DNA of 32,000 nt, from contig NW_008806279.1 of NCBI RefSeq assembly GCF_000400465.1, forward strand, positions 356,107-388,106, in the 5' to 3' direction. Of this stretch, positions 1 through 25,841 are shown one piece after another. The stretch is from Wallemia ichthyophaga EXF-994. Its lineage: Eukaryota; Fungi; Basidiomycota. Within the stretch, counting starts at the first letter, position 1. Every line of letters begins with the position of its first letter. The notes under the pieces were generated by a model, which made no database searches, was not told where the DNA came from, and worked only from the letters and a program-made list of their open reading frames with translations. A program made the translations under genes and the position numbers.

Positions 1-51
1 ACGTTTACTTTGTGCTTTTCACTTTACAGAAACTGATTCATATCATTCTAG

Positions 52-1464
52 TCCGGCTCACAATTCACTGTCACCAATTATTTCATCTTTAGTTACAGGT
101 AATGCTTGTATCGTCAAAGCTTCGGAATTTGTTGCGTGGTCCTCCAATTGGTTTGTTGGAGCTGTCAAGGAAGCCTTAAGAGTGAATGGTGAAGATCCAA
201 ATCTGGTTCAGGTATGTTATTTTAACCTGTTGACCTTCTTTGCCTAAAACATCTCTTTAGCTCGTTGTATGTTACCCAGATATCGTTGAAACACTGACAA
301 CTTCACGTGATATCGATCATATTACCTTCATTGGCTCAGAGCTTGTGGGTAAAAAGGTTGCTTCAGCCGCTTCTGTAAATCTCAAGCCCTGTTGCATTGA
401 ATTGGGCGGAAAAGATGCTGCCGTAATTTTAAAATCCACTGATTTGCACTTTTTCGAATCAACCTTTTTGAGAGCTACGTTTCAAGCAGCTGGTCAGAAT
501 TGCATTGGTATGCCAATTCGTTGTCAAATCTTTCAAACCATCTTAGTCTCATTCATAGGTATTGAAAGGTTCATTGTTCACAATGACATCTACGATCAAT
601 TTGTCAGTAGAATGCACGACCGTATCAAAGATTTGCGTCTCGGAACGTCATCTGGCAGTAATACTTGCGTCGACGTTGGTGCAATGATATCCAATACACG
701 ATTTCAGCAGCTGGAAGGCCTGATAAATGATGCCGTTAAATTGGGTGCAAAGGTTTTGCATGGCGGTAAAAGGTACACTCATCCAGAATATCCGAATGGT
801 CACTACTTTGAACCGTGGGTTCAATTACATCTTTTTTATTACTAAACTAAAAATTATCATAGTACATTGCTAGTCGACGTCACCTCTGAAATGGAGATAT
901 TCCATCAAGAATGTAGGTTGATTAAGGCACTTGTTCTAATCCCTAAATACGTTATAGTGTTCGCTCCTGTTATGACAGTTATAAAAGCCTCATCAACTAA
1001 GGACGCCATCCATTTAGCAAATAATACAAGATTTGGACTTGGTGGTGCAGTTTTCGGCAACGATCAAGCAGAGTGTTCCTTAGTTGCTCATAATATGAAA
1101 TGCGGTATGGTCAGGTAAGATTCTGCCCAACAGAGCGTTATGATTGTCTCATTACCTTATCAGCCTGAATGACTTTGGCGTCTTTTATCTGAATCAATCT
1201 ATGCCATTTGGAGGGGTTAAATCAAGCGGATATGGAAGATTTGGTGGGTGTGAAGGATTATACGGCTTGTGCAATCCGAAAGCTGTTATTGAAGACAGGT
1301 TCTTCTCATTGATAAGAACTCCGATACCTAAGCCTTTGGACTATCCAGTCAAATCTACAACCGCATCATGGCATTTTGTGAAAGGACTAATTTTACTCGT
1401 TTACGCCGAAACTCTAGCTGACAAAGTTACCGGTCTAATGAATTTGTTGAAAAATTCCTTTTAA
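52..1464 (+). CDS. MSC7: Aldehyde dehydrogenase, MSC7-like family (5' part lies before the window; about 6 exons visible)
   Basis: Spliced exons give PAHNSLSPIISSLVTGNACIVKASE, HITFIGS, ELGGKD (catalytic Glu), GQNCIG/IERFIV (catalytic Cys) and NDFGVFYLNQSMPFGGVKSSGYGRFGG. GT-AG introns at about 211-260, 509-557, 815-861, 913-957 and 1095-1162. Stop at 1464. Subfamily call from recalled motifs. Confidence 0.85.
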
Positions 1465-2050
1465 TACTATCAACAATTTATACTCTTCAGTAAAATTTAT
1501 GGGTTGTAAGTGTTATTCACTGCGTGAAGATTCGAAGACCCCTTCAAAGTAAATAGAATCGACATAGATAAGTGTAACCACAGAATATTTAAATACAATG
1601 TACACTTTAAGACTTTAAATATGCGGATTTATATTGCGATGAATTTGATCGGCAGTACTCTAAACAAACATTCAAGTCTATAAGTGAGCTGGTGTGGATC
1701 CACGAAGAAATTTTATAGATAAGAAATATAATTGCAGCGGTCTCAATCTGAAATGAAACCAGCATATTATGTGCGTTTATAGGAGAAAAGAAGTAAATAT
1801 ACTACGTGACGAATGAAAAGTGATAACGTGGAATTATGATTAGTAGCGGCAAAGATGAATCGGCTAGCAGCCGATAAGTGACGGAAAAACAGCGGCCGGA
1901 AAAATATTCTTCAAACGACGACGATAGAATAAAGCAGCCTCACTTTGGACTCGTGATGTCATCTTAAAAACTCTGACGAGTGGCTGGAAGTGGGAACCGA
2001 CAAGGCTCAATTTATTCCATGAAACAAAGGATCAAATAAATCCAAATTTC

Positions 2051-2405
2051 AAAGTGCGTGCATTAGGTTAGGGCGTACTGGTAAAATGACCAGGACCAAC
2101 ACAATTACCTAAATTTTAAGGATTTTTATTGTAAAGAATATGAGTAAGATACGAGTGCCTTCTTAAGCGCATGAACGAAGAAAAATTACGCCTAACGGCA
2201 CATGCAGCTTGTTGTTAAGCTATCATCACGCTGTACACCGCAACTAAGTCCAAATTTCTCCACGTCACCCTTCCAGAGCCAAAGTTCCAGAAGTTTCAGA
2301 ATGGAATCCAACAACTTCTACATACTGTTCGAGCATGCGTTAGTTAAGAAACGCTTCCAGGAAAATTCAGGACCCTCTTCGACTGCTCATGCTTTAAGAA
2401 GTATT
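2051..2405 (+). repeat. Outer diverged inverted repeat, left arm (pairs with ~8028-8320)
   Basis: Colinear reverse-complement blocks: 2056-2081 vs 8289-8314 (21/26), 2121-2149 vs 8222-8250 (22/29), 2208-2231 vs 8141-8164 (19/24). Coordinate sums are constant (10370-10372). Further gapped blocks extend to ~2405/8028. Confidence 0.8.
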
Positions 2406-2454
2406 GATGGACGCAGTATATAATATGTATCGTCTTAACAACATATTCATATTT

Positions 2455-2471
2455 CATCATCATCATCATCA
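2455..2471 (+). repeat. (CAT)n microsatellite
   Basis: TCATCATCATCATCATCA run read directly. Confidence 0.8.
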
Positions 2472-3262
2472 CTGTTCAAGCATGCCTTTTCCCATGAAGT
2501 ATCTTACACTTATTTGAAAACTCAATTTATTAAATCTACTTAATCGCTGTACAGCCCAATGCACATCACAGCCGCCTATCACTTTCAAGATTAGCGAAAT
2601 TTACACTATGTAATGGAAGGAATATGTTAAAAATGTATTATCTATTAAAATGATAACAATTATTGAATCAATAAGTAGGTGCTAGGACGCAGGCATAGAT
2701 GGTGAATGATACAAGAAATACAAAGCTATGCACGTATAAGGAAACCCCAGGATAACAAGAAGCAGTGTGAAAAAGAAAAGCTCTGGGCTTAGCATTTACT
2801 TAAAGTTCAAGGATTGCGATAAACAAATAAGGACATAAATACATTCGCTTACCATAATGCGTATTTGAGGTAATGTTGAGAAGCGAAGCTGCAAAGACAG
2901 AAGTCCATTCGATAGCTTTGTAACTCAACGGGCGAAGGTCATAATGAACTAATCAGAACTGCAATAAATCCACTGTAAACATTAAGTCATAAGGATTAGG
3001 TAAGACAGTATTGTCTAAAATTTTGAATTTTTCTGCTGTCCCCCCACATGGAATTGACATCAATCAAATGGCACCCTTTATTATCCAAGCGCTAAAAGAT
3101 TATCTACTGTAGAGTATTGACTCAGTATGTAATTGAAAGATGGTCTCATTTTAGCAACTTTCGAAGTATTCTGAAGTGCTATGTAGAGTCTATGCATAGA
3201 AACATTAACTGGCTTGGTGTTGAGGCCCTGCGCATATTAAGTTATAGCATTATTTTCAAATC

Positions 3263-4125
3263 AACAAACCTACTTACACCACAGCAGTAGCTAGAAGCAG
3301 CATGACCCTCAAATTTGAAGCCATGGAAACAAGGCTTGCTTTCTCTTAATACGAAGGGAAAATTTCAGTGCCGAAGATGAACCAACTACTTGGCATATGC
3401 TCTTTGGGTCTACTAACGAAAGTTTAATGTTCGCTTCCATTAGATTATAATCAAGGCTCATGAAGTCACTGAAGGCTCGCGCCAAAATGAATTTTTGTGG
3501 AGGCATAAGCGAATCTCCCTGGCAATGCACAAAGGCAGCTCCAACTCCAAACTCAATGGTAGCACATATGTAACGTTTTGGTGTTTTACTTGATGAATAC
3601 AATCAGATCATCATCATATCTTTTAACTATAGGCCACATGCCAAAATCAGTAATGAAAGACTGATTGATTTCGATAGAAGTAAGTTTTATTTCAGTGGCT
3701 AAGAAGTAGTTTCTCTCAAAACAAGGCCATTATACTAGATTGGTGATCAAATAGTACTTAATTTTGCTAGTCATTAACTTTCAATTGGGAGACTAATGAT
3801 GATAAATACTGCTTCAGCGGAGTCATTAATCCCTGTAACTAAGATTCAACGAAGTTGTCCTAAGCATACGTCCTTGAAATTTCTCACTCGTTAGGCTCTA
3901 TAAAACAGACATGATCTTGATCCAGTTTATTTAAAAAAGAATTTCGATATAATGTTTATTGCTAAAATGGATGAATTGAAATGTTGTATTTCATAGAAGC
4001 CATTCATGATTAAAAATTAATGTCCTGAAGGTGCTCACAGATCTTGGCCTATGGAGGCCTTCATCTATACAAACGATAATATGTTCTACTTATCGGTAGC
4101 GAGAACTCACAGTACGCCTGTGTTA
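3263..4125 (+). repeat. Inner inverted repeat, left arm (863 bp)
   Basis: Line-by-line comparison with the reverse complement of 5151-6014: identical except one extra base (CC at ~3437 vs GGG at 5838-5840). Confidence 0.98.
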
Positions 4126-5150
4126 TCTCTGTTGAAGGCCCTCAGACGAAATAGCCAGGGCAAATTGTAGGAACACTCGTTTTTGTACATAAGTAAACGA
4201 TAAACGTTGAAACTGCAAACTAAGCTCGTGGATATAATTTAAATTTTTACAGGAAGGCCCATGGATTTATCAATGAGACATTTTACACAAACACAAATTT
4301 GTTGGAATTTCATGATTACAAAGATATCTCAGAGTAAGAATTTTCAAAAGACTTCACCAATAACAAAACCTGAATCAACTTAAACATACTTTGTTCAGCT
4401 CCATGAAATTCTATAACTTCTACTTGATAGAGTTAAGTGCAAGCACTTGTCTAGAAACAACTTATAATATACAATTACTAACGAATTTATTGTGAGGAGA
4501 TCCCTAGCATTGTCCAGACGAAAAAAAAAAAGAGTTTTTGTGCATTTTGCTTTGCATGATGACAATCAATAAATCTTTCATCGCCTTAAAATACCATTAT
4601 AGATTTTCAATACAACTAAACAGAAAACGCAGCAAATGTTCGGAACAGCGAAGCTGAAAAATCTGACTGTGATAATCCCGCCTAAACGTTAAGGACATTG
4701 TTCCAGGAAACTTCGAAGAAAAATACAGTGTAAGAAATTAAGTTATGAAAGAAGTTGTACATCATATTCAATCGATAACTATTAATCTTCGTAAGCTTTT
4801 GTAACAAAAAGCTCTAACAATTTTTATGGATAAAGTATTGGATACTTTGATAACTATGGAAACAAGACTTGAAATACAGATATCTGCAAAGTATGACTTT
4901 GAGTTCATTTGGTGGTCAGGAGTTACAAAAAACCTTAGTCTGGTTGAAAGATAAGAATTAAATCATACCTAATTTACCTCTAAGCTAAAGGCTTCCTTCG
5001 TTATTAAATCCAACAAAAACATAAAAAGGGTTATACTGCCTTAAGCTGCAAATGGGTTGTGCTAAAAACCGCCCGACTTGGTACTTTGTTACCTTCGTAT
5101 ATGTTTTTACAATCGCCTATCCAAAACCAGTGAAGGGTAATGGGTAGTGG
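4126..5150. other. 1025-bp unique AT-rich spacer (core) between the inner arms
   Basis: Bounded by the arm ends TGTGTTA|4126 and 5150|TAACACA. Sampled lines are 25-27% GC. A11 tract near 4520. Confidence 0.9.
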
Positions 5151-6014
5151 TAACACAGGCGTACTGTGAGTTCTCGCTACCGATAAGTAGAACATATTAT
5201 CGTTTGTATAGATGAAGGCCTCCATAGGCCAAGATCTGTGAGCACCTTCAGGACATTAATTTTTAATCATGAATGGCTTCTATGAAATACAACATTTCAA
5301 TTCATCCATTTTAGCAATAAACATTATATCGAAATTCTTTTTTAAATAAACTGGATCAAGATCATGTCTGTTTTATAGAGCCTAACGAGTGAGAAATTTC
5401 AAGGACGTATGCTTAGGACAACTTCGTTGAATCTTAGTTACAGGGATTAATGACTCCGCTGAAGCAGTATTTATCATCATTAGTCTCCCAATTGAAAGTT
5501 AATGACTAGCAAAATTAAGTACTATTTGATCACCAATCTAGTATAATGGCCTTGTTTTGAGAGAAACTACTTCTTAGCCACTGAAATAAAACTTACTTCT
5601 ATCGAAATCAATCAGTCTTTCATTACTGATTTTGGCATGTGGCCTATAGTTAAAAGATATGATGATGATCTGATTGTATTCATCAAGTAAAACACCAAAA
5701 CGTTACATATGTGCTACCATTGAGTTTGGAGTTGGAGCTGCCTTTGTGCATTGCCAGGGAGATTCGCTTATGCCTCCACAAAAATTCATTTTGGCGCGAG
5801 CCTTCAGTGACTTCATGAGCCTTGATTATAATCTAATGGGAAGCGAACATTAAACTTTCGTTAGTAGACCCAAAGAGCATATGCCAAGTAGTTGGTTCAT
5901 CTTCGGCACTGAAATTTTCCCTTCGTATTAAGAGAAAGCAAGCCTTGTTTCCATGGCTTCAAATTTGAGGGTCATGCTGCTTCTAGCTACTGCTGTGGTG
6001 TAAGTAGGTTTGTT
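5151..6014 (-). repeat. Inner inverted repeat, right arm (864 bp)
   Basis: Reverse complement of 3263-4125 with a single 1-nt insertion. Confidence 0.98.
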
Positions 6015-7344
6015 AATTTAAAGATGTTTTGTTTTACTATCATTCATTGTAAAATCAAAGCAGTTAAAAACTGTTACGATCTTGATGATTCTTTTCCTTT
6101 TCTCCTAATGAACCCAAATTTCAATTTTATGGCATGATTAACGATGAGGTGACTTGCCATCCTTAGAGATTCATATTAATTTCTTAATTCGTGTAATACA
6201 TTGACTCATATTTATGTCTTTTCGGATCAAGCTTCATTTCCATAGCTGTCACCTCTCCTAGTCCATTTCTGTTACTGAATGGTTGAGAGATACCGGGACT
6301 GATCATATCTTTTCGATTTCTGAATTGTTAGTTGTCGAAACTGTCGAAGGATGGTTGATTGGGCTAACTGAGAAGCGACCTAACCGAATTCAAGCCAACT
6401 GCCGGAGTATTTTGTGTATAGCGATCTTTTATCGTGCATTTGGAGTTTCTAAAATCTCGATTTCGATTGCATCATTCAGATGTCTACACAGGTGAGTCAT
6501 CGTATACTTAATTCATATCCAGACCTTAGATACCTATCCCGCCTTTTTGACGAGTTAGTTTTTTGCGATTCCATCTAAGCTCTAATGTGCCCTGAAATTT
6601 AATTGTGCAGTCTTTCTTTCTTCATTATCTTCTGCTTGCTAACGTTTCAGTGAAATCTCTCTCTAGCCATAAAACATGTATGTCATCATGCATTAGGGAG
6701 TTCCTTGTTTGAAATTAGTCTGCAAGTATTCGATTGAGGTACCACTACAAATACGTAAAGACTTAAGGCTTTGGTCGTTCTTTAATCGGTATGAATGCAT
6801 GTATGCTTTTAGTTTTTATAAAATACGACTCTCGTTCGTTGTCAAATAGATCGAAGTCAATGGACGTAATAAAGGGATAGAATTGGATAAGATAGTTGTT
6901 TAATCGAAGTTTTTTTAATTCCATAATACGTTGATTTCAACTTGACTGCAAGAGTGTATAATACGATTGTACTCGTACTATTTGTACAATGAGCTCGAAA
7001 GTCGTGCAAAATGAGCGTTTACGGTACGACTACAACATTCCAAAAGCTGTATCAATCTTGTGCAATGTAATGAAAAGATTAAGATAAGCTGTACGAAAGT
7101 ACGTATATTGAAAGCACTACCCATCCGTAACTAAGTAAGTGCTGAGCCCTAAACTGTTGAAGATAGTCTTGAAGATTTATCTCAATCTGTGGACCAGGAG
7201 GAAACTTTGATGTTCGAAGTCAATTTCCCGTCAAGACTTTTTAGCGTATAAAAAGGCGAATCGCTGCACCAAGTATATTGCGTCTTGAGACTTACGCTTA
7301 TAGTTGTCGATCTTCAATATAATTGAGTGCACTCGTTATCCTAC

Positions 7345-7818
7345 TTACCTCGAAAACAGGGCCCTCATGTCCCACACTTATTTTGTTGTCAATGTTGTGT
7401 TGTTTAAAGGCACTTTCTTGACTGAGCTGTTGTTAGAGAATTCTGCGAAGGGTAACACATCTTTCAATGTGCCAACTATAACTTTGTAATCATGCGTAGC
7501 TTGAATGCGAATGTGTCGATTTTATTTTCTGCGTTTACATTTGCTTAAGCGAGCTTTGCGAATGATACCTCTAGGCGTACCTGGTGAACTCTCCTCAATG
7601 TCGCCCTGAAGTCTAATGTGTGTAACCGAGACATTTCTCGGATTTCTCTCGGTATCCGAATTTTTGTGTGATGTTCCTGTTTTATGTTCCTTTCTTATTG
7701 AGAATATGATAGGCCGAACGTCATGCTGTTCCGCCCACTTTTCAGTTTATCCTTGCCAACAGCGTTTCGGTACTTTTAGACGAGTGCATGTCTGTAATGT
7801 TGTAGAGAATTCTGGCAT
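7345..7818 (-). pseudogene. Possible decayed ORF relic (158 codons, 3 internal TAA stops), no recognised homology
   Basis: One minus frame reads MPEFSTTLQTCTRLKVPKRCWQG*TEKWAEQHDVRPII...RKARLSKCKRRK*NRHIRIQATHDYKVIVGTLKDVLPFAEFS...TTK*VWDMRALFSR*. This is fewer stops than expected for AT-rich DNA. Confidence 0.25.
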
Positions 7819-8027
7819 AATTTAATTTAGCTCTCTTTTTTGTCCATTACTTAGGTTGTACATGAGTTTGCAACACGCTGTTGCTTTAGATATTTTGTAA
7901 GTGTTTCATTCGTTTATATAGCTAGAAGTAGCATTAGATTGATAGGTGGTGACGACACAGTTAAAATGCAGTGAATATTTTGTTCACCATACTGTCCCCA
8001 GACGTAGTACCCACTAATTTATTTCAT

Positions 8028-8320
8028 ATACTTCTTGAAGTTTTTGTGGGTATTTCATCATAACCTTTTTCCATTACACAAAAAGCGATGTAGCGAATAT
8101 TCTAAGTACCAGACCGGGAAGAGGTGAAGTGGGGCGTGTGGCGTGCCAATAGCCTAACAGCAAGGGAATACCATTCATTGTGTTTCTTCTTCGTTACCGT
8201 GTCTTATAGTTCATTCCTAACTCTTGGTCATATTGGGTATAACAAAAATCTCAACAATTTATAGATTATGTTGGGCCCAGTCGGTCTTCCAGCAAACCCT
8301 AACCTAATTCACACATTTTA
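8028..8320 (-). repeat. Outer diverged inverted repeat, right arm
   Basis: See left arm: colinear reverse-complement blocks, with transition and transversion differences. Confidence 0.8.
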
Positions 8321-8416
8321 AATAGTTGATATATTTTAATTTTGATTTTTGGCGTAATCTCTCGGATTTTAAAGAGTACATTGACCTCAAAACGGCTTAC
8401 TCCTCCGGCAACTTTT

Positions 8417-8446
8417 CAGTTTTCCCTAAACTAAGGCACGCATTTT
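8417..8446 (-). repeat. Third copy of a 30-bp motif with a TTAG(G/T)TTAGGG core
   Basis: Reverse complement AAAATGCGTGCCTTAGTTTAGGGAAAACTG matches 2051-2080 AAAGTGCGTGCATTAGGTTAGGGCGTACTG at 24/30. Confidence 0.75.
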
Positions 8447-9352
8447 GATTAGTGGATGACACAAGAATCATGGTGTCGTTAGTATGACTTATTCGGAATT
8501 ACAGGATCTTTTAAAGTCTTTTGATGGTTGTGTTCCATAAATAGGCTAAGTTCGAAAGTTTTAGTAGGCGCAATACGATTGATAGGTAGGAAGACGATAC
8601 ACTCAAGTCTAATATCTAGCTACTTAATTATCATCAGCCGCTCTCCACTCTATTTCTTCCTCAACTCTCTGAACCACCGTAGGATAATTAACCTTCATGT
8701 GTCTTTTATTACATATTGTCTGATAACCTAAAAGTTTTTGTTCACCTCAAATTTGGTTAGAGATCTAACAACACGTCTATAGATACCCGAAGAACCCTGT
8801 GAACAATACCGAGACATGGTAACCACGGGATATTAATGACACTTGGAGGCACGTGTACGCTGGTAAGTTTAGCTCCAAGGTACAGCTAAGACCTTTTTCT
8901 CCATGGTAATTTCAGAATTAAGTGCTAAAGAGAGGTCATTAATCAATCTGGTCCATTTGAAGATGAATGGAAAGAGCGATTCAGGAGACAATGAATGTGT
9001 CGAGTAGAGATGCAAATTATGACAGTGCATACAATGTACTTGAATTACTAGCATTTGCTTGTACCTGGTGTCTCGTAACTGAATATGCAATACGACACCA
9101 ACGCAGAATAAAAAGCGGTAAACATTAAGTAAGAAATTACAAGGAAACCAATAAAAGCTTTAAGCCCATTAGTTTAGATAAAGAACGACTAGGATGAAAA
9201 AGGTGGAAAATGCGATAGAACTGCCTTTGCTAATGCGTCGCGATTGCTTATAAATAATGGTAAATTGCAAATGTGAGTGTTTGTGAAGATGCTGATAAGA
9301 AATTAAAAGAGCGTAGGTGGGTAGCGAAGTCATTCATGCTTCAACGCCAGCG

Positions 9353-10971
9353 CTAAGCTCTTTAGCTGAGTGAATCTATATATATTAACAGACAAGCCAC
9401 GTGAATAATATTTGACTTACGAGAGTGAGCAGTCTGTGATGATTATTCTTGGTCATCTTTTGCGAGTCAGCTAAACAGAAAATCTAAAGACGGTGCACTG
9501 CGCCCACCAAAGAGAGGATGTTCACGAGGAACTGAGCGCCGATTGAGCTGTCAACAATCACTTTAATTGTAAAACTGTTGTTCGTTAGCTGATAGACTGA
9601 CACACCAATCAACTCACATGGTCTCTGCATCGTTCAGCAGCAGCCTCGACAGAAGTTCAACAGCATACTCATTCTTCCTCCCCATAGTGAGGCAGGCCAT
9701 AAGGCAACGCGCGCCGTAAAAATCAACGGACAGTTGCTTATATGAGTAGATCAGCAGGGTAGTGACGCGAGCAAGTGAAGATTCCGAAGCGCGTTCTATA
9801 AGATACTGTACGACGGTGGAGCCCCATTTGTTTAGTGCGCAGGAAGTTATGTTATCGAGAATCTACTCGTTTTAAGCTTGGCAAATCCTGTAAAACCCAA
9901 ACACACCTCATTGAAACACGCCCCAGCACCATCTTTACCGAGAATGGACTGAATGATGAGCGAGCCCGTGTCCGTATTCGCGCAGTGCACCCAGCGCCCC
10001 TTCATAGCGGCGTTGACGGTGGGCATGATATGAGGAGTGTAGATAAGCCATTTGATCTGCAAAGTCGGCCTATTAGCTGGTTATCTAATTTTTCAGTGCT
10101 TCGCTCACTTCTAACGCTTTTGACCAAACATGCGAAGCGTTCTAGAAGAAGTCAGGAGTATCCACAGTCGCAGCCAATCCCAAACGCACCTTATGCGTGA
10201 CTCCCTGAGCGACATTTTTGTCTAGGAGCTCATTTATAATGAGAAGCTTTAACAAAGTGTTAAAAAAAGCTCAGACTCATGATATAACCCGCCTTGACAT
10301 GCTCAGGAGACGTCGCCAGCAGCTTTTGGAGGACGTGAGTGCCGTACGAGTTCATAGCGACACCCTCGATCTGACCACTGATGGCATTGACTATACGCAA
10401 CTTATAGCTAATGTCTTCCACATCAAGGATCCTCTGTATGAGAAAGTTGCCGAAGCGATTAGTCGACAGCGGCAGAGCGCGGTTGAGAACAGCATCAACA
10501 AGAAGATCAAGCTGTGGGCGCTCGAGTGACTTGAGTTTCTGTTGCAGAAAGATGCTGGCCTGCTGATCAGTCTTGATAATGATGCGCTGGACGACCTCTA
10601 TGTGGTGATTAGACGTGTGTGACAAAGGCACAAGAGTCATAATCAGCGCACCTGCGTAGTTGACATCACTATTAGGCTTCAACATTTCTCTGAAATTCAA
10701 GTTGCTGTTGCGCGTATTGAGCTTGGCGCTGGTTAGCGCGGTCGTCGTGTTAGCGCTACACCCACGACGACCGCAGGAGGGGCGCTGAGGACAGCAGGCC
10801 AAGCCGAGTTGAGAGATTTGAATGAAGAGTTCTGATTTGTGTATAAATTCCCTGTCAAATCAACGCCGTGAACCCACTCTGCCGTCAAAACTCCAAATTT
10901 TGTCGATATCGTCATCCTGTAGAGAGATGAGCAGAGCGTGGGGATAAGAAAGCGCTAACTAACGTAAAACA
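9353..10971 (-). CDS. Pumilio/PUF-repeat RNA-binding protein, Mcp2/meiotic-PUF-like; multi-exon, 5' and 3' exons uncertain
   Basis: Spliced exons give IKTDQQASIFLQQKLK, STNRFGNFLIQR, MNSYGTHVLQK, THK/NASHVWSKALE, NTDTGSLIIQS, LNKWGSTVVQY and DFYGARCL (successive PUF repeats), separated by 43-52 nt GT-AG introns. Confidence 0.85.
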
Positions 10972-11145
10972 TTGCGGAATGTAAAGAATGTAAATAAATT
11001 AAACTAAAAAGATTTCGTTCCTGGTGGTGGGAGATTGACATGTGGATGGCGAGATGAGGATATCACTGCGGGTTGTTGTTGTTTTGATTCTGCCAGTTTT
11101 GCATTCTAAAACAATGTTAGTAGATAAAATCTACAATGCATGCAC

Positions 11146-23047: not shown

Positions 23048-23631
23048 TTATAAGAGATCAGGGGCCCAGCTACTGATCGGTGGTAATCGAAGTCTCTTGG
23101 TGGAGGGTGGTGAGGGTGGTGCGATTGGCTCTGGCTTAGGCATTTCATCCGTAAAACTGCAATCCTTGTGTCTTTGGCTGCAGCGTGCTGTTTTAGTTTT
23201 AAATGAGCTGCCGAGTGGAATGCGCATGTGTCACCTACTGCACGTCGGTTTCAGTCCATCGCACTTGAGCTTACTGCTCTTGCAATTTGTACACGCTCTA
23301 AGTATACGATGGCGTCTGTCTTTGGTAAGCGGATTCGATGGCCGCGTGTGGAGCGTCATATGTCTGGTGAGGACATCTGAGCGCGCAAAAGAGCGCCCGC
23401 AGAAGGTGCAGCTGATTATAGGGGTTAGTGGGGGTGAAATGAATAGGATGAAACCATATAAACTAACATATGCGGCCTTTCTTTTGTATCTGTATAAAAA
23501 TTAGCTTCAACATTCCATACGGGAGCAGTTGTAGTCCACTCACGCGCAGAGTTTATGTGGCGTACGAGGTGCTCGTAACGACTGAAAACCTTCTGACACT
23601 GATCACATTGGTGTTGCTGCGTATCGGACAT
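23048..23631 (-). CDS. 140-aa transcription factor with two C2H2 fingers and a Zn(II)2Cys6 cluster (4 exons)
   Basis: Spliced: HQCDQCQKVFSRYEHLVRHINSA/HTKERPH/ICTFCGRSFARSDVLTRHMTLH...RACTNCKSSKLKCDGLKPTC/TRCSQRHKDC (CX2CX6CX6CX2CX6C)...KRLRLPPISSWAPDLL*. Confidence 0.87.
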
Positions 23632-25066: not shown

Positions 25067-25421
25067 GACGTGAGTGTTGGTTATCAAGGTGTATATATAT
25101 GTGTTGTGTGTGTGTATTGTATGTATTGTGTACGTGCGTACGTGCGTTAACTGCGTTTTTACGAGTACGAATATTGCTACAAATCTGTAACTTTGCCTTA
25201 TAAGAATAAAGTAGACACAAAGTATTCGAATTAGAATATCAAGTCAATAATATTATATTAAGTACAATATTTCATCTCATGTAGAAGCACCCAGGCCAAT
25301 TATCAATAGGCAATTAATGTCTAGAAACGTGGTATCTATTAACAACGCACACAAAACACCCTTCTTAATACAATGCTAGCACTAACGCCTACACTGAACA
25401 GAGAAAGAATGCAGCATGAGC

Positions 25422-25550
25422 TGTCTAATGAAAAATTGGCTATGGTCCAGAGGACACAAAGCACTAGGGTTTGGAGTAGATTTCAACCAGCAACGTACTC
25501 AGGCTCGGTTTTCACCTCAATGCCATGAGTTCTAACCCTTGCACAAAGAT
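25422..25550 (-). ncRNA. U4: U4 spliceosomal snRNA
   Basis: Minus strand AUCUUUGUGCAAGGG (U4/U6 stem II), 5' stem-loop ACUCAUGGCAUUGAGGUGAAAACCGAGCCUGAGU with K-turn GA/AG pairs, UUGCUGGUUGAAA (U4/U6 stem I), Sm-like site AAUUUUUC at 25430-25437. Order and spacing match fungal and human U4 as recalled. 3' end approximate. Confidence 0.9.
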
Positions 25551-25841
25551 GGTTTGAAATAAGAGTATCTAGCCTGACTATATCTCATTTGCGCACCGAG
25601 ACCTAGTTGTGTGACGAGATGCACTAAAAATGTGAATTTATAGAGGTTTTTTCAACTAGCTTTGTTTTTGATTGAGCGTTTGGCGTCTAAAATCTCTACT
25701 CATACCAATCAACTCTTAATCTCTGCAAAGCTGATGGTTCAAAAGTTTCACATTACAACTACATGAATTATGTCAAGAGATATTTATATATGTAAATCAT
25801 TTTATTCAAATTCAAATCAAATTCATTTAAATCCATTCATC

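What the first reader, a model, noticed from the sequence alone, without database searches (positions are those of the whole stretch)
1465..9352. Candidate inverted-repeat regional centromere in a compact basidiomycete-like genome
Seen: every other intergenic gap here is under ~0.8 kb, while this one is 7.9 kb. Both neighbours (ALDH +, PUF -) terminate into it, so it is not promoter space. GC falls to 22-27% in sampled lines around 3900-4860. The layout is outer IR / inner IR / 1 kb AT-rich core / inner IR / outer IR. Established: IR-core-IR centromeres occur in Komagataella phaffii, Candida tropicalis and S. pombe (cnt/imr), and short AT-rich regional centromeres occur in Malassezia. Inference: this is the centromere of this chromosome. 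I know of no IR-type centromere described for Wallemia-like basidiomycetes, but I cannot check novelty.
Basis: partly seen in the sequence, partly recalled or inferred. Interest (0 to 1): 0.8.

Follow-up and report, generated by a model that had tools for sequence, protein, structure and literature searches.

The report
Gene-free inverted-repeat region, possible centromere
A compact basidiomycete-type fungal genome carries one 8-kb stretch with no genes, holding a near-perfect 880-base inverted repeat around a 1-kb core; it looks like the small inverted-repeat centromeres of some yeasts, but sequence alone cannot show that it is one.

Summary
The gene desert is real. Window 1465-9352 (to about 9483 if measured to the PUF coding end) has no coding signal, no protein-domain or transposon relic and no RNA gene. 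Every other gap in the 32 kb is about 0.6 kb or less.

The inner inverted repeat is real: 3252-4130 and 5146-6025 are identical except for edge fuzz and one homopolymer indel, and they flank a unique 1015-nt core. The "outer IR" is only an old 61-65% identical remnant that sits asymmetrically. The "GC trough" is weak: the desert is 36.7% GC and the core 33.4%, the same as ordinary intergenic DNA here (37.2%) and as the genes on the left flank.

New here:
- A highly significant A/T strand-skew switch lies at the core, with the polarity of a replication origin.
- Short-read contigs of the same species confirm both edges but stop at 2410 and 8395.

The architecture matches Komagataella-type IR-core-IR centromeres. 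One locus per chromosome and CENP-A binding cannot be tested here. Centromere is the best single explanation (about 0.45). A non-centromeric inverted duplication or a foldback-type repeat remains open. "Wallemia-like" is not supported: the best protein identity to any named fungus is 72-73%.

The parts
1465..9352 (.). Gene-free, non-coding interval between convergent genes. It extends to about 9483 if measured to the end of PUF coding sequence.
   Evidence: No long ORFs. No 3-periodicity. No Pfam hits in six frames. No protein homologues. No tRNA or Rfam family. GC 36.7%; CpG observed/expected 0.86, against 0.83 elsewhere in the window.
3252..4130 (+). Left arm of the inner inverted repeat
   Evidence: 880-nt reverse-complement match to 5146-6025. 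Identical over 3263-4125 except for one C-run indel. No target-site duplication at the outer ends, judged by reading.
4131..5145 (.). Unique central core of 1015 nt; the lowest-GC part of the desert (33.4%)
   Evidence: No internal repeats or notable structure.
5146..6025 (-). Right arm of the inner inverted repeat
2012..2706 (+). Left copy of an old, decayed inverted similarity. The blocks are 2012-2242 and 2555-2706, with about 310 nt of extra sequence between them. It contains TTAGGTTAGGG at 2063-2073.
   Evidence: BLAST: 65% identity, E about 1e-19, and 61.5%, E 3e-4. Alignment.
7983..8357 (-). Right copy of the old inverted similarity. It contains the reverse complement of TTAGGTTAGGG at 8297-8307.
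5100..5300 (.). Switch point of A/T strand asymmetry: A>T on the + strand over 1500-5250, T>A over 5250-8750
   Evidence: Cumulative A-T rises by 236, then falls by 254. Chi-square p = 5.5e-14, and 0 of 10,000 random strand flips reach the observed statistic. There is no GC skew.
1..1464 (+). 3' part of an aldehyde dehydrogenase gene that terminates into the desert
   Evidence: Pfam Aldedh. Short-read contigs L005, L006 and L007 run from this gene into the desert.
9484..11000 (-). PUF-repeat gene that terminates into the desert (approximate limits)
   Evidence: Pfam PUF. Terminal ORFs. Contig L001 covers 8395-10926.

Best explanation
The interval is most likely the small regional centromere of this chromosome, of the IR-core-IR type. 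In this reading a unique 1-kb core would carry the CENP-A nucleosomes. It is flanked by two 0.88-kb arms kept identical by intrachromosomal gene conversion, and the whole unit sits in about 8 kb of unique, non-coding DNA between two convergently transcribed genes. The A/T strand-asymmetry switch at the core suggests that a replication origin has fired there constitutively over evolutionary time, as reported at small regional centromeres of Candida and Yarrowia.

What is shown: the desert, the inverted repeat, the lack of any coding or transposon relic, and the skew switch.

What is inferred: kinetochore assembly, origin activity and gene-conversion maintenance.
For: 1. It is the only long gene-free interval in 32 kb of otherwise tightly packed genes: about 8 kb against about 0.6 kb or less elsewhere. 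Both neighbours end in it.
2. It is not a hidden gene, pseudogene cluster or transposon graveyard.
   - There is no periodicity.
   - There is no Pfam domain in six frames.
   - There is no homologue for any ORF of 40 aa or more.
   - The one 97-aa ORF gives only a spurious hit to a repeat protein.
   - There is no RNA family.
3. The 880-nt near-perfect IR around a 1015-nt unique core has the same plan as Komagataella phaffii centromeres, which have a 2-kb IR around a 1-kb core (PMC5010909).
4. The AT skew is positive to the left of about 5200 and negative to the right, p = 5.5e-14. This is the polarity expected if T is enriched on the leading strand of forks leaving an origin. Koren et al. 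describe that pattern at C. albicans and Y. lipolytica centromeres, the latter with AT skew but no GC skew and a local GC dip (PMC2924309). The sign is opposite to what read-through from the convergent genes would give, because sense-strand four-fold sites here have T>A, skew -0.16.
5. The core is the local GC minimum.
6. Short-read contigs of the same species confirm both edges at 99.5-99.7% identity but stop at 2410 (two samples) and 8395. This is expected if the interior is repeated or structurally variable.
Against: - There is no chromatin, Hi-C or whole-genome information, so 'one per chromosome' and CENP-A occupancy are untested.
- The composition is not special. The GC equals that of other intergenic DNA in the window and of the genes on the left flank. 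Malassezia-type cores, by contrast, are 78% AT against a 41.5% genome average (PMC7025860).
- An almost perfect IR could simply be a recent inverted duplication.
- The centromeres described in the basidiomycete papers I read are transposon-rich (Cryptococcus) or lack inverted repeats (Malassezia).
- The skew antisymmetry could be a leftover of an older, larger palindrome (the outer 65% remnant) or of outward transcription, rather than of an origin.
- The two contigs that stop at 2410 carry the same SNPs, so they are not fully independent.
Confidence: 0.45

Rival explanations
1. A non-centromeric long intergenic spacer in which a segment underwent a recent inverted duplication. On this view the IR has no kinetochore role, and the region is tolerated junk or regulatory or non-coding-RNA space between two 3' ends.
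For: The arms are essentially identical, as expected for a young duplication. The base composition and CpG content equal those of ordinary intergenic DNA. No positive centromere-specific signal can be obtained from sequence alone.
Against: The genome is otherwise very compact, so 8 kb of functionless unique DNA is unexpected. The older 61-65% inverted remnant and the strong skew antisymmetry indicate that a palindromic or origin-like organisation has persisted for a long time and is not a one-off recent event.
Confidence: 0.25
2. The central 6 kb or so (about 2411-8394), or the 2.8-kb IR-core-IR unit, is a non-autonomous foldback or long-TIR mobile element, or another dispersed repeat, inserted between the two genes.
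For: Long terminal-inverted-repeat geometry. Short-read contigs stop at the same base, 2410, in two samples, and another contig starts at 8395. Assembly graphs behave this way at the edge of a multi-copy sequence.
Against: - There is no target-site duplication at the IR ends, and no terminal repeats at 2381-2411 or 8395-8425, judged by reading.
- There is no transposase, reverse transcriptase or integrase relic.
- There is no second copy in the window.
- An exact 30-mer of the arm is absent from JGI metagenome contigs.
- A repeat shared between centromeres, as in Candida tropicalis, would break assemblies in the same way.
Confidence: 0.17
3. Assembly artefact: the inverted duplication was created by chimeric or fold-back long reads and does not exist in the genome.
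For: The arms are 100% identical except for a homopolymer-length difference, which is typical of long-read error. The independent short-read contigs verify only 1-2410 and 8395-10926, not the interior.
Against: - Fold-back artefacts normally lack a 1-kb unique spacer and sit at contig ends. Here there are unique flanks on both sides, each joined to verified genes.
- The edges of the arms decay gradually into non-homology.
- The outer diverged inverted remnant cannot be an artefact.
Confidence: 0.05

Closest known systems
Komagataella phaffii centromeres (Coughlan et al. 2016, PMC5010909)
   Same: A simple IR flanking a unique core of about 1 kb. Non-coding, no transposons and no satellite. The total size is a few kb within a gene-poor or transcription-cold interval, and the sequence is unique to the locus as far as can be seen.
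   Different: The arms are 0.88 kb rather than about 2 kb. The organism is a basidiomycete-type fungus, not a budding yeast. Cse4 binding, early replication and core-inversion polymorphism were shown there and are untested here.
Candida tropicalis-type homogenised-IR centromeres and S. pombe cnt/imr
   Same: A central core bracketed by inverted repeats. If the interior is shared between chromosomes, that would explain the short-read assembly breaks at 2410 and 8395.
   Different: There are no tRNA boundary genes as in S. pombe imr and no otr-like outer repeats. Whether any sequence is shared between chromosomes is unknown. The arms are much shorter.
Candida albicans / Yarrowia lipolytica centromere-linked replication-origin skew (Koren et al. 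2010, PMC2924309)
   Same: A sign switch of A/T strand asymmetry inside the long centromeric intergenic region, with T excess on the outward-moving leading strands. As in Y. lipolytica, there is AT skew without GC skew and a local GC dip.
   Different: Here the pattern is also what a decayed palindrome or outward transcription would leave. Only one locus could be examined.
Malassezia short regional centromeres (Sankaranarayanan et al. 2020, PMC7025860)
   Same: Basidiomycete, compact genome, and a kinetochore region of a few kb in a gene-free interval.
   Different: Malassezia has a strongly AT-rich core of under 1 kb (78% AT), a 12-bp motif, and explicitly no direct or inverted repeats. Here the core is only 3 percentage points lower in GC than its surroundings, and an IR is the main feature.

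Membership tests
IR-core-IR small regional centromere (K. phaffii / C. tropicalis type) | Unique central core of about 1-3 kb flanked by a high-identity inverted repeat | tested here: met
   880-nt arms, at least 99.3% identical, around a 1015-nt core.
IR-core-IR small regional centromere (K. phaffii / C. tropicalis type) | Lies in a gene-free interval | tested here: met
   No coding signal, protein domain, homologue or RNA gene in 1465-9352.
IR-core-IR small regional centromere (K. phaffii / C. tropicalis type) | CENP-A/Cse4 enriched on the core with a gradient along the arms | not testable with these tools
   Needs ChIP-seq or CUT&RUN.
IR-core-IR small regional centromere (K. phaffii / C. 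tropicalis type) | Exactly one such locus per chromosome | not testable with these tools
   Only one 32-kb window is available. The source genome and close relatives could not be reached.
IR-core-IR small regional centromere (K. phaffii / C. tropicalis type) | Transcriptional cold spot | not testable with these tools
   No RNA-seq data.
IR-core-IR small regional centromere (K. phaffii / C. tropicalis type) | Early or constitutive replication origin at the centromere | tested here: inconclusive
   There is an AT-skew switch of origin polarity. A decayed palindrome or outward transcription would give the same pattern.
Malassezia-type AT-rich short regional centromere | Core under 1 kb that is far more AT-rich than the genome, without repeats | tested here: not met
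   The core is 66.6% AT, against 63% for the surrounding non-coding DNA, and an IR is present.
Cryptococcus-type transposon-rich regional centromere | Clusters of LTR-retrotransposon remnants, often with methylation-driven CpG loss | tested here: not met
   No RT, IN or gag relics. CpG observed/expected is 0.86, against 0.83 elsewhere.
Foldback / long-TIR non-autonomous DNA transposon | Terminal inverted repeats bounded by a target-site duplication | tested here: not met
   An IR is present, but the sequences flanking 3252 and 6025 share no duplication (read; arm edges).
Foldback / long-TIR non-autonomous DNA transposon | Multiple copies in the genome | tested here: inconclusive
   No second copy in the window and none in JGI metagenome contigs. 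However, short-read contigs break at 2410 and 8395.

The most novel reading that the evidence does not exclude
This is the first inverted-repeat (IR-core-IR) small regional centromere seen in a basidiomycete. On this reading it arose independently of those in budding and fission yeasts and carries the strand-skew footprint of a constitutive centromeric replication origin. Its central 6 kb or so may be shared or structurally variable between chromosomes or haplotypes.
Probability: 0.4. Interest if true: 0.75.

Novelty: new member of a known kind. Interest (0 to 1): 0.55.

Why it matters
Inverted-repeat centromeres have so far been described in ascomycete yeasts (Komagataella, Candida tropicalis and relatives, and S. 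pombe on a larger scale). The basidiomycete centromeres in the papers I read are transposon-rich (Cryptococcus) or AT-rich without repeats (Malassezia).

A confirmed IR-core-IR centromere in a deep-branching, compact basidiomycete would be a further independent origin of this architecture. That would strengthen the idea that palindromic DNA itself favours CENP-A deposition or centromere stability. It would also give a small, clonable candidate for building stable plasmids or artificial chromosomes in that lineage.

If it is not a centromere, it is an ordinary inverted duplication in an unusually long spacer, of little general interest.

Tried and rejected
- **Hidden gene or pseudogenes.** Rejected. 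There is no periodicity, no Pfam hit in six frames and no homologue. The only hit to the 97-aa ORF (E 8.6e-7) is summed weak matches to a tandem-repeat protein.
- **Transposon graveyard or RIP/methylation decay.** Rejected for the same reasons, and because CpG and the RIP indices equal those of the rest of the window.
- **RNA gene.** There is no tRNA. Rfam gives only sub-threshold snoRNA noise.
- **Synteny in relatives.** This failed. The nearest PUF homologues are 41-46% identical. Their contigs (L002-L004) share no neighbouring gene with the window.
- **Prokaryote genome collection.** It holds only bacteria and archaea, so it is irrelevant and was not used.
- **Finding the organism.**
  - KGD1 gives 72-73% identity at best.
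  - The run accession and neighbouring accession prefixes are not in the paper library.
  - An exact 30-mer of the IR is absent from JGI metagenome contigs.
- **Interior of the desert from short-read assemblies.** It could not be fetched, because no protein was ever called on it and look-ups work by protein only.
- **Motif enrichment in the desert, of the Malassezia kind.** None was found beyond a (CAT)n microsatellite.
- **Special structure or repeats in the core.** None was found.
- **Read-through transcription as the cause of the skew.** Rejected on sign.
Full report
**What is in the sequence**

The window is gene-dense fungal DNA. Pfam confirms these genes:
- an aldehyde dehydrogenase ending at 1464 on the + strand;
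- on the other side, a PUF-repeat gene (-), NAF1 (-) and a V-SNARE (+);
- further on, UTP23, an importin, a RanBP1-domain protein and PEX13;
- a U4 snRNA gene;
- 2-oxoglutarate dehydrogenase E1.

That last ORF is at best 72-73% identical to any named protein. Its hits spread evenly over Agaricomycetes and Tremellomycetes. The source is therefore a basidiomycete-type fungus with no close sequenced relative in the databases available. "Wallemia-like" is not supported.

**The desert**

Between the ALDH stop and the PUF 3' end there is no coding signal.
- Only one ORF reaches 80 aa: 3309-3602(-), 97 aa.
- Fourier power at period 3 stays at background from about 1500 to 9450, while most long exons elsewhere in the window give values of 3-13. 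The longest stop-free frames average about 50 codons.
- A six-frame Pfam scan of the whole interval gives nothing.
- All 78 stop-to-stop ORFs of 40 aa or more, searched together against 5.8 billion proteins, gave no hit at E <= 0.01.
- An exhaustive HMMER search with the 97-aa ORF returned one hit. It proved to be summed weak matches to a tandem-repeat protein.
- There is no tRNA and no Rfam family.
- CpG observed/expected (0.86) and the RIP indices match the rest of the window. Nothing points to methylated or RIP-mutated transposon remains.

By my rough gene map, the other gaps in the window are about 0.6 kb or less. PUF coding sequence seems to end near 9484, so the CDS-to-CDS gap is about 8.0 kb.

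**The repeats**

One inverted repeat dominates: 3252-4130 against 5146-6025, with 1015 nt between the arms. A base-by-base alignment shows the arms identical from 3263 to 4125, except for a CC/CCC length difference at 3437/5840. A few mismatches at both edges fade into non-homology. I saw no target-site duplication outside the arms (reading).

- 2012-2242 against 8357-8130 at 65% identity (E about 1e-19);
- a colinear second block, 2555-2706 against 8133-7983, at 61.5% (E 3e-4).

These lie 1.0 kb and 2.1 kb from the inner arms, so the layout is not symmetric. Both copies keep a TTAGGTTAGGG block.

**Composition**

GC values are as follows:

| Region | GC |
|---|---|
| Desert | 36.7% |
| Core | 33.4% |
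| Rest of the window | 45.3% |
| U4 intergenic spacer | 37.2% |
| ALDH gene | 39.8% |

The lowest 100-nt GC window of the whole 32 kb is at 25741, outside the desert. The trough is therefore simply "non-coding DNA of this genome", with a slight extra dip in the core. It is nothing like the 78% AT cores of Malassezia.

A short-read contig that extends 1.9 kb beyond the left end of the window is also GC-poor, at 37.1%. A mitochondrial-carrier gene on it has GC3 of 0.27, and the ALDH exons have 0.35-0.40. Genes to the right of the desert have 0.40-0.59. The low-GC domain is thus one-sided and continues out of view.

**A new observation: strand asymmetry**

Cumulative A-T rises steadily from 1500 to about 5250 (+236), then falls to 8750 (-254). 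The unique left part plus the core has 1011 A and 796 T. The right flank has 737 A and 969 T (chi-square p = 5.5e-14). None of 10,000 random strand assignments of 250-nt blocks reaches the observed statistic. There is no GC skew.

The sign (A>T on the left, T>A on the right) is what outward-moving forks leave if T accumulates on the leading strand. Koren et al. describe this at C. albicans centromeres. They also describe it in Y. lipolytica as an AT skew without a GC skew, together with a local GC dip (PMC2924309).

It is not what read-through from the two convergent genes would leave. Four-fold degenerate sites in this window's genes have T>A on the sense strand, skew -0.16. Two other causes would give the same pattern and cannot be excluded: outward transcription from the centre, or a decayed larger palindrome.

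**Independent sequence of the same species**

Protein look-ups found Logan short-read contigs at 99.5-99.7% identity:

| Contig | Sample | Window span |
|---|---|---|
| L001 | SRR25394054 | 8395-10926 |
| L005 | SRR25394091 | 1-2410, plus upstream DNA |
| L007 | SRR25393947 | 791-2410 |
| L006 | SRR25393958 | 1-1810 |

They confirm that both edges of the desert are joined to the flanking genes. L005 and L007 stop at exactly 2410. They carry the same SNPs, so they are one haplotype and not fully independent. Nothing in the window explains a k-mer branch at that position. The roughly 6 kb between 2411 and 8394 may be multi-copy in the genome, as a repeat shared between centromeres or a mobile element would be. 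Alternatively it may be structurally heterozygous. I could not fetch interior contigs, because no protein was ever called on them.

**Interpretation**

The anatomy is that of a Komagataella-type centromere: a unique 1-kb core, a simple near-identical IR, and no transposons or satellites, inside a gene-free interval (PMC5010909). The added skew switch fits a centromere-linked origin.

Against this:
- Nothing that defines a centromere (CENP-A binding, one per chromosome) could be tested.
- The composition is unremarkable.
- A perfect IR can be young.
- The centromeres described in the basidiomycete papers I read have no inverted repeats, and no paper found deals with centromeres of Wallemia-like fungi.

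I put the centromere reading at about 0.45, a non-centromeric inverted duplication in a long spacer at about 0.25, a foldback or dispersed repeat at about 0.17, and an assembly artefact at about 0.05.

**Novelty and verdict**

If confirmed, this would be a new member of a known kind, the IR-core-IR small regional centromere, in a phylum where I found none described. The decisive data are chromatin profiling, Hi-C, a whole-genome census of such loci, and read-level analysis of the SRR runs.

Noticed in passing
window 2410 and 8395 (contigs L005, L007, L001): Short-read contigs from two samples end at exactly base 2410, and another starts at 8395. The roughly 6-kb interior of the desert was not recoverable. 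This suggests a repeat boundary or a structural polymorphism there. SNP density against the window is higher at the desert edges (7 in 946 nt on the left, 4 in 958 nt on the right) than in the ALDH gene (3 in 1464 nt).
   Followed up: partly
L005 1-1869 (DNA left of the window) and window 1-1464: Genes left of the desert are GC-poor: the mitochondrial-carrier gene has GC3 of 0.27 and the ALDH exons 0.35-0.40. Genes to the right have GC3 of 0.40-0.59. A one-sided low-GC domain continues beyond the window.
   Followed up: partly
window 2063-2073 and 8297-8307: A telomere-like TTAGGTTAGGG block is conserved in both copies of the old 65% inverted remnant, inside a roughly 45-nt well-conserved stretch. 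It could be a protein-binding site or chance.
   Followed up: no
window 25412-25550 (-): A U4 spliceosomal snRNA gene (Rfam RF00015, 70 bits) sits in the spacer between PEX13 and the 2-oxoglutarate dehydrogenase gene. This spacer holds the lowest 100-nt GC window of the whole sequence.
   Followed up: no
window 7717-7753 and 8391-8427: A short direct repeat of 37 nt at 76% identity, sharing CTTTTCAGTTT. The second copy overlaps the point where contig L001 begins. It may be chance.
   Followed up: no
window 2447-2470 and 4520-4531: A (CAT)n microsatellite and an A11 run inside the desert. No other enriched motif was found.
   Followed up: yes
window 23234-23631 (-): ORFs with C2H2 zinc-finger-like and Zn2Cys6-like motifs suggest a transcription-factor gene between the RanBP1-domain gene and PEX13. 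This rests on reading the translations, not on a Pfam test.
   Followed up: no
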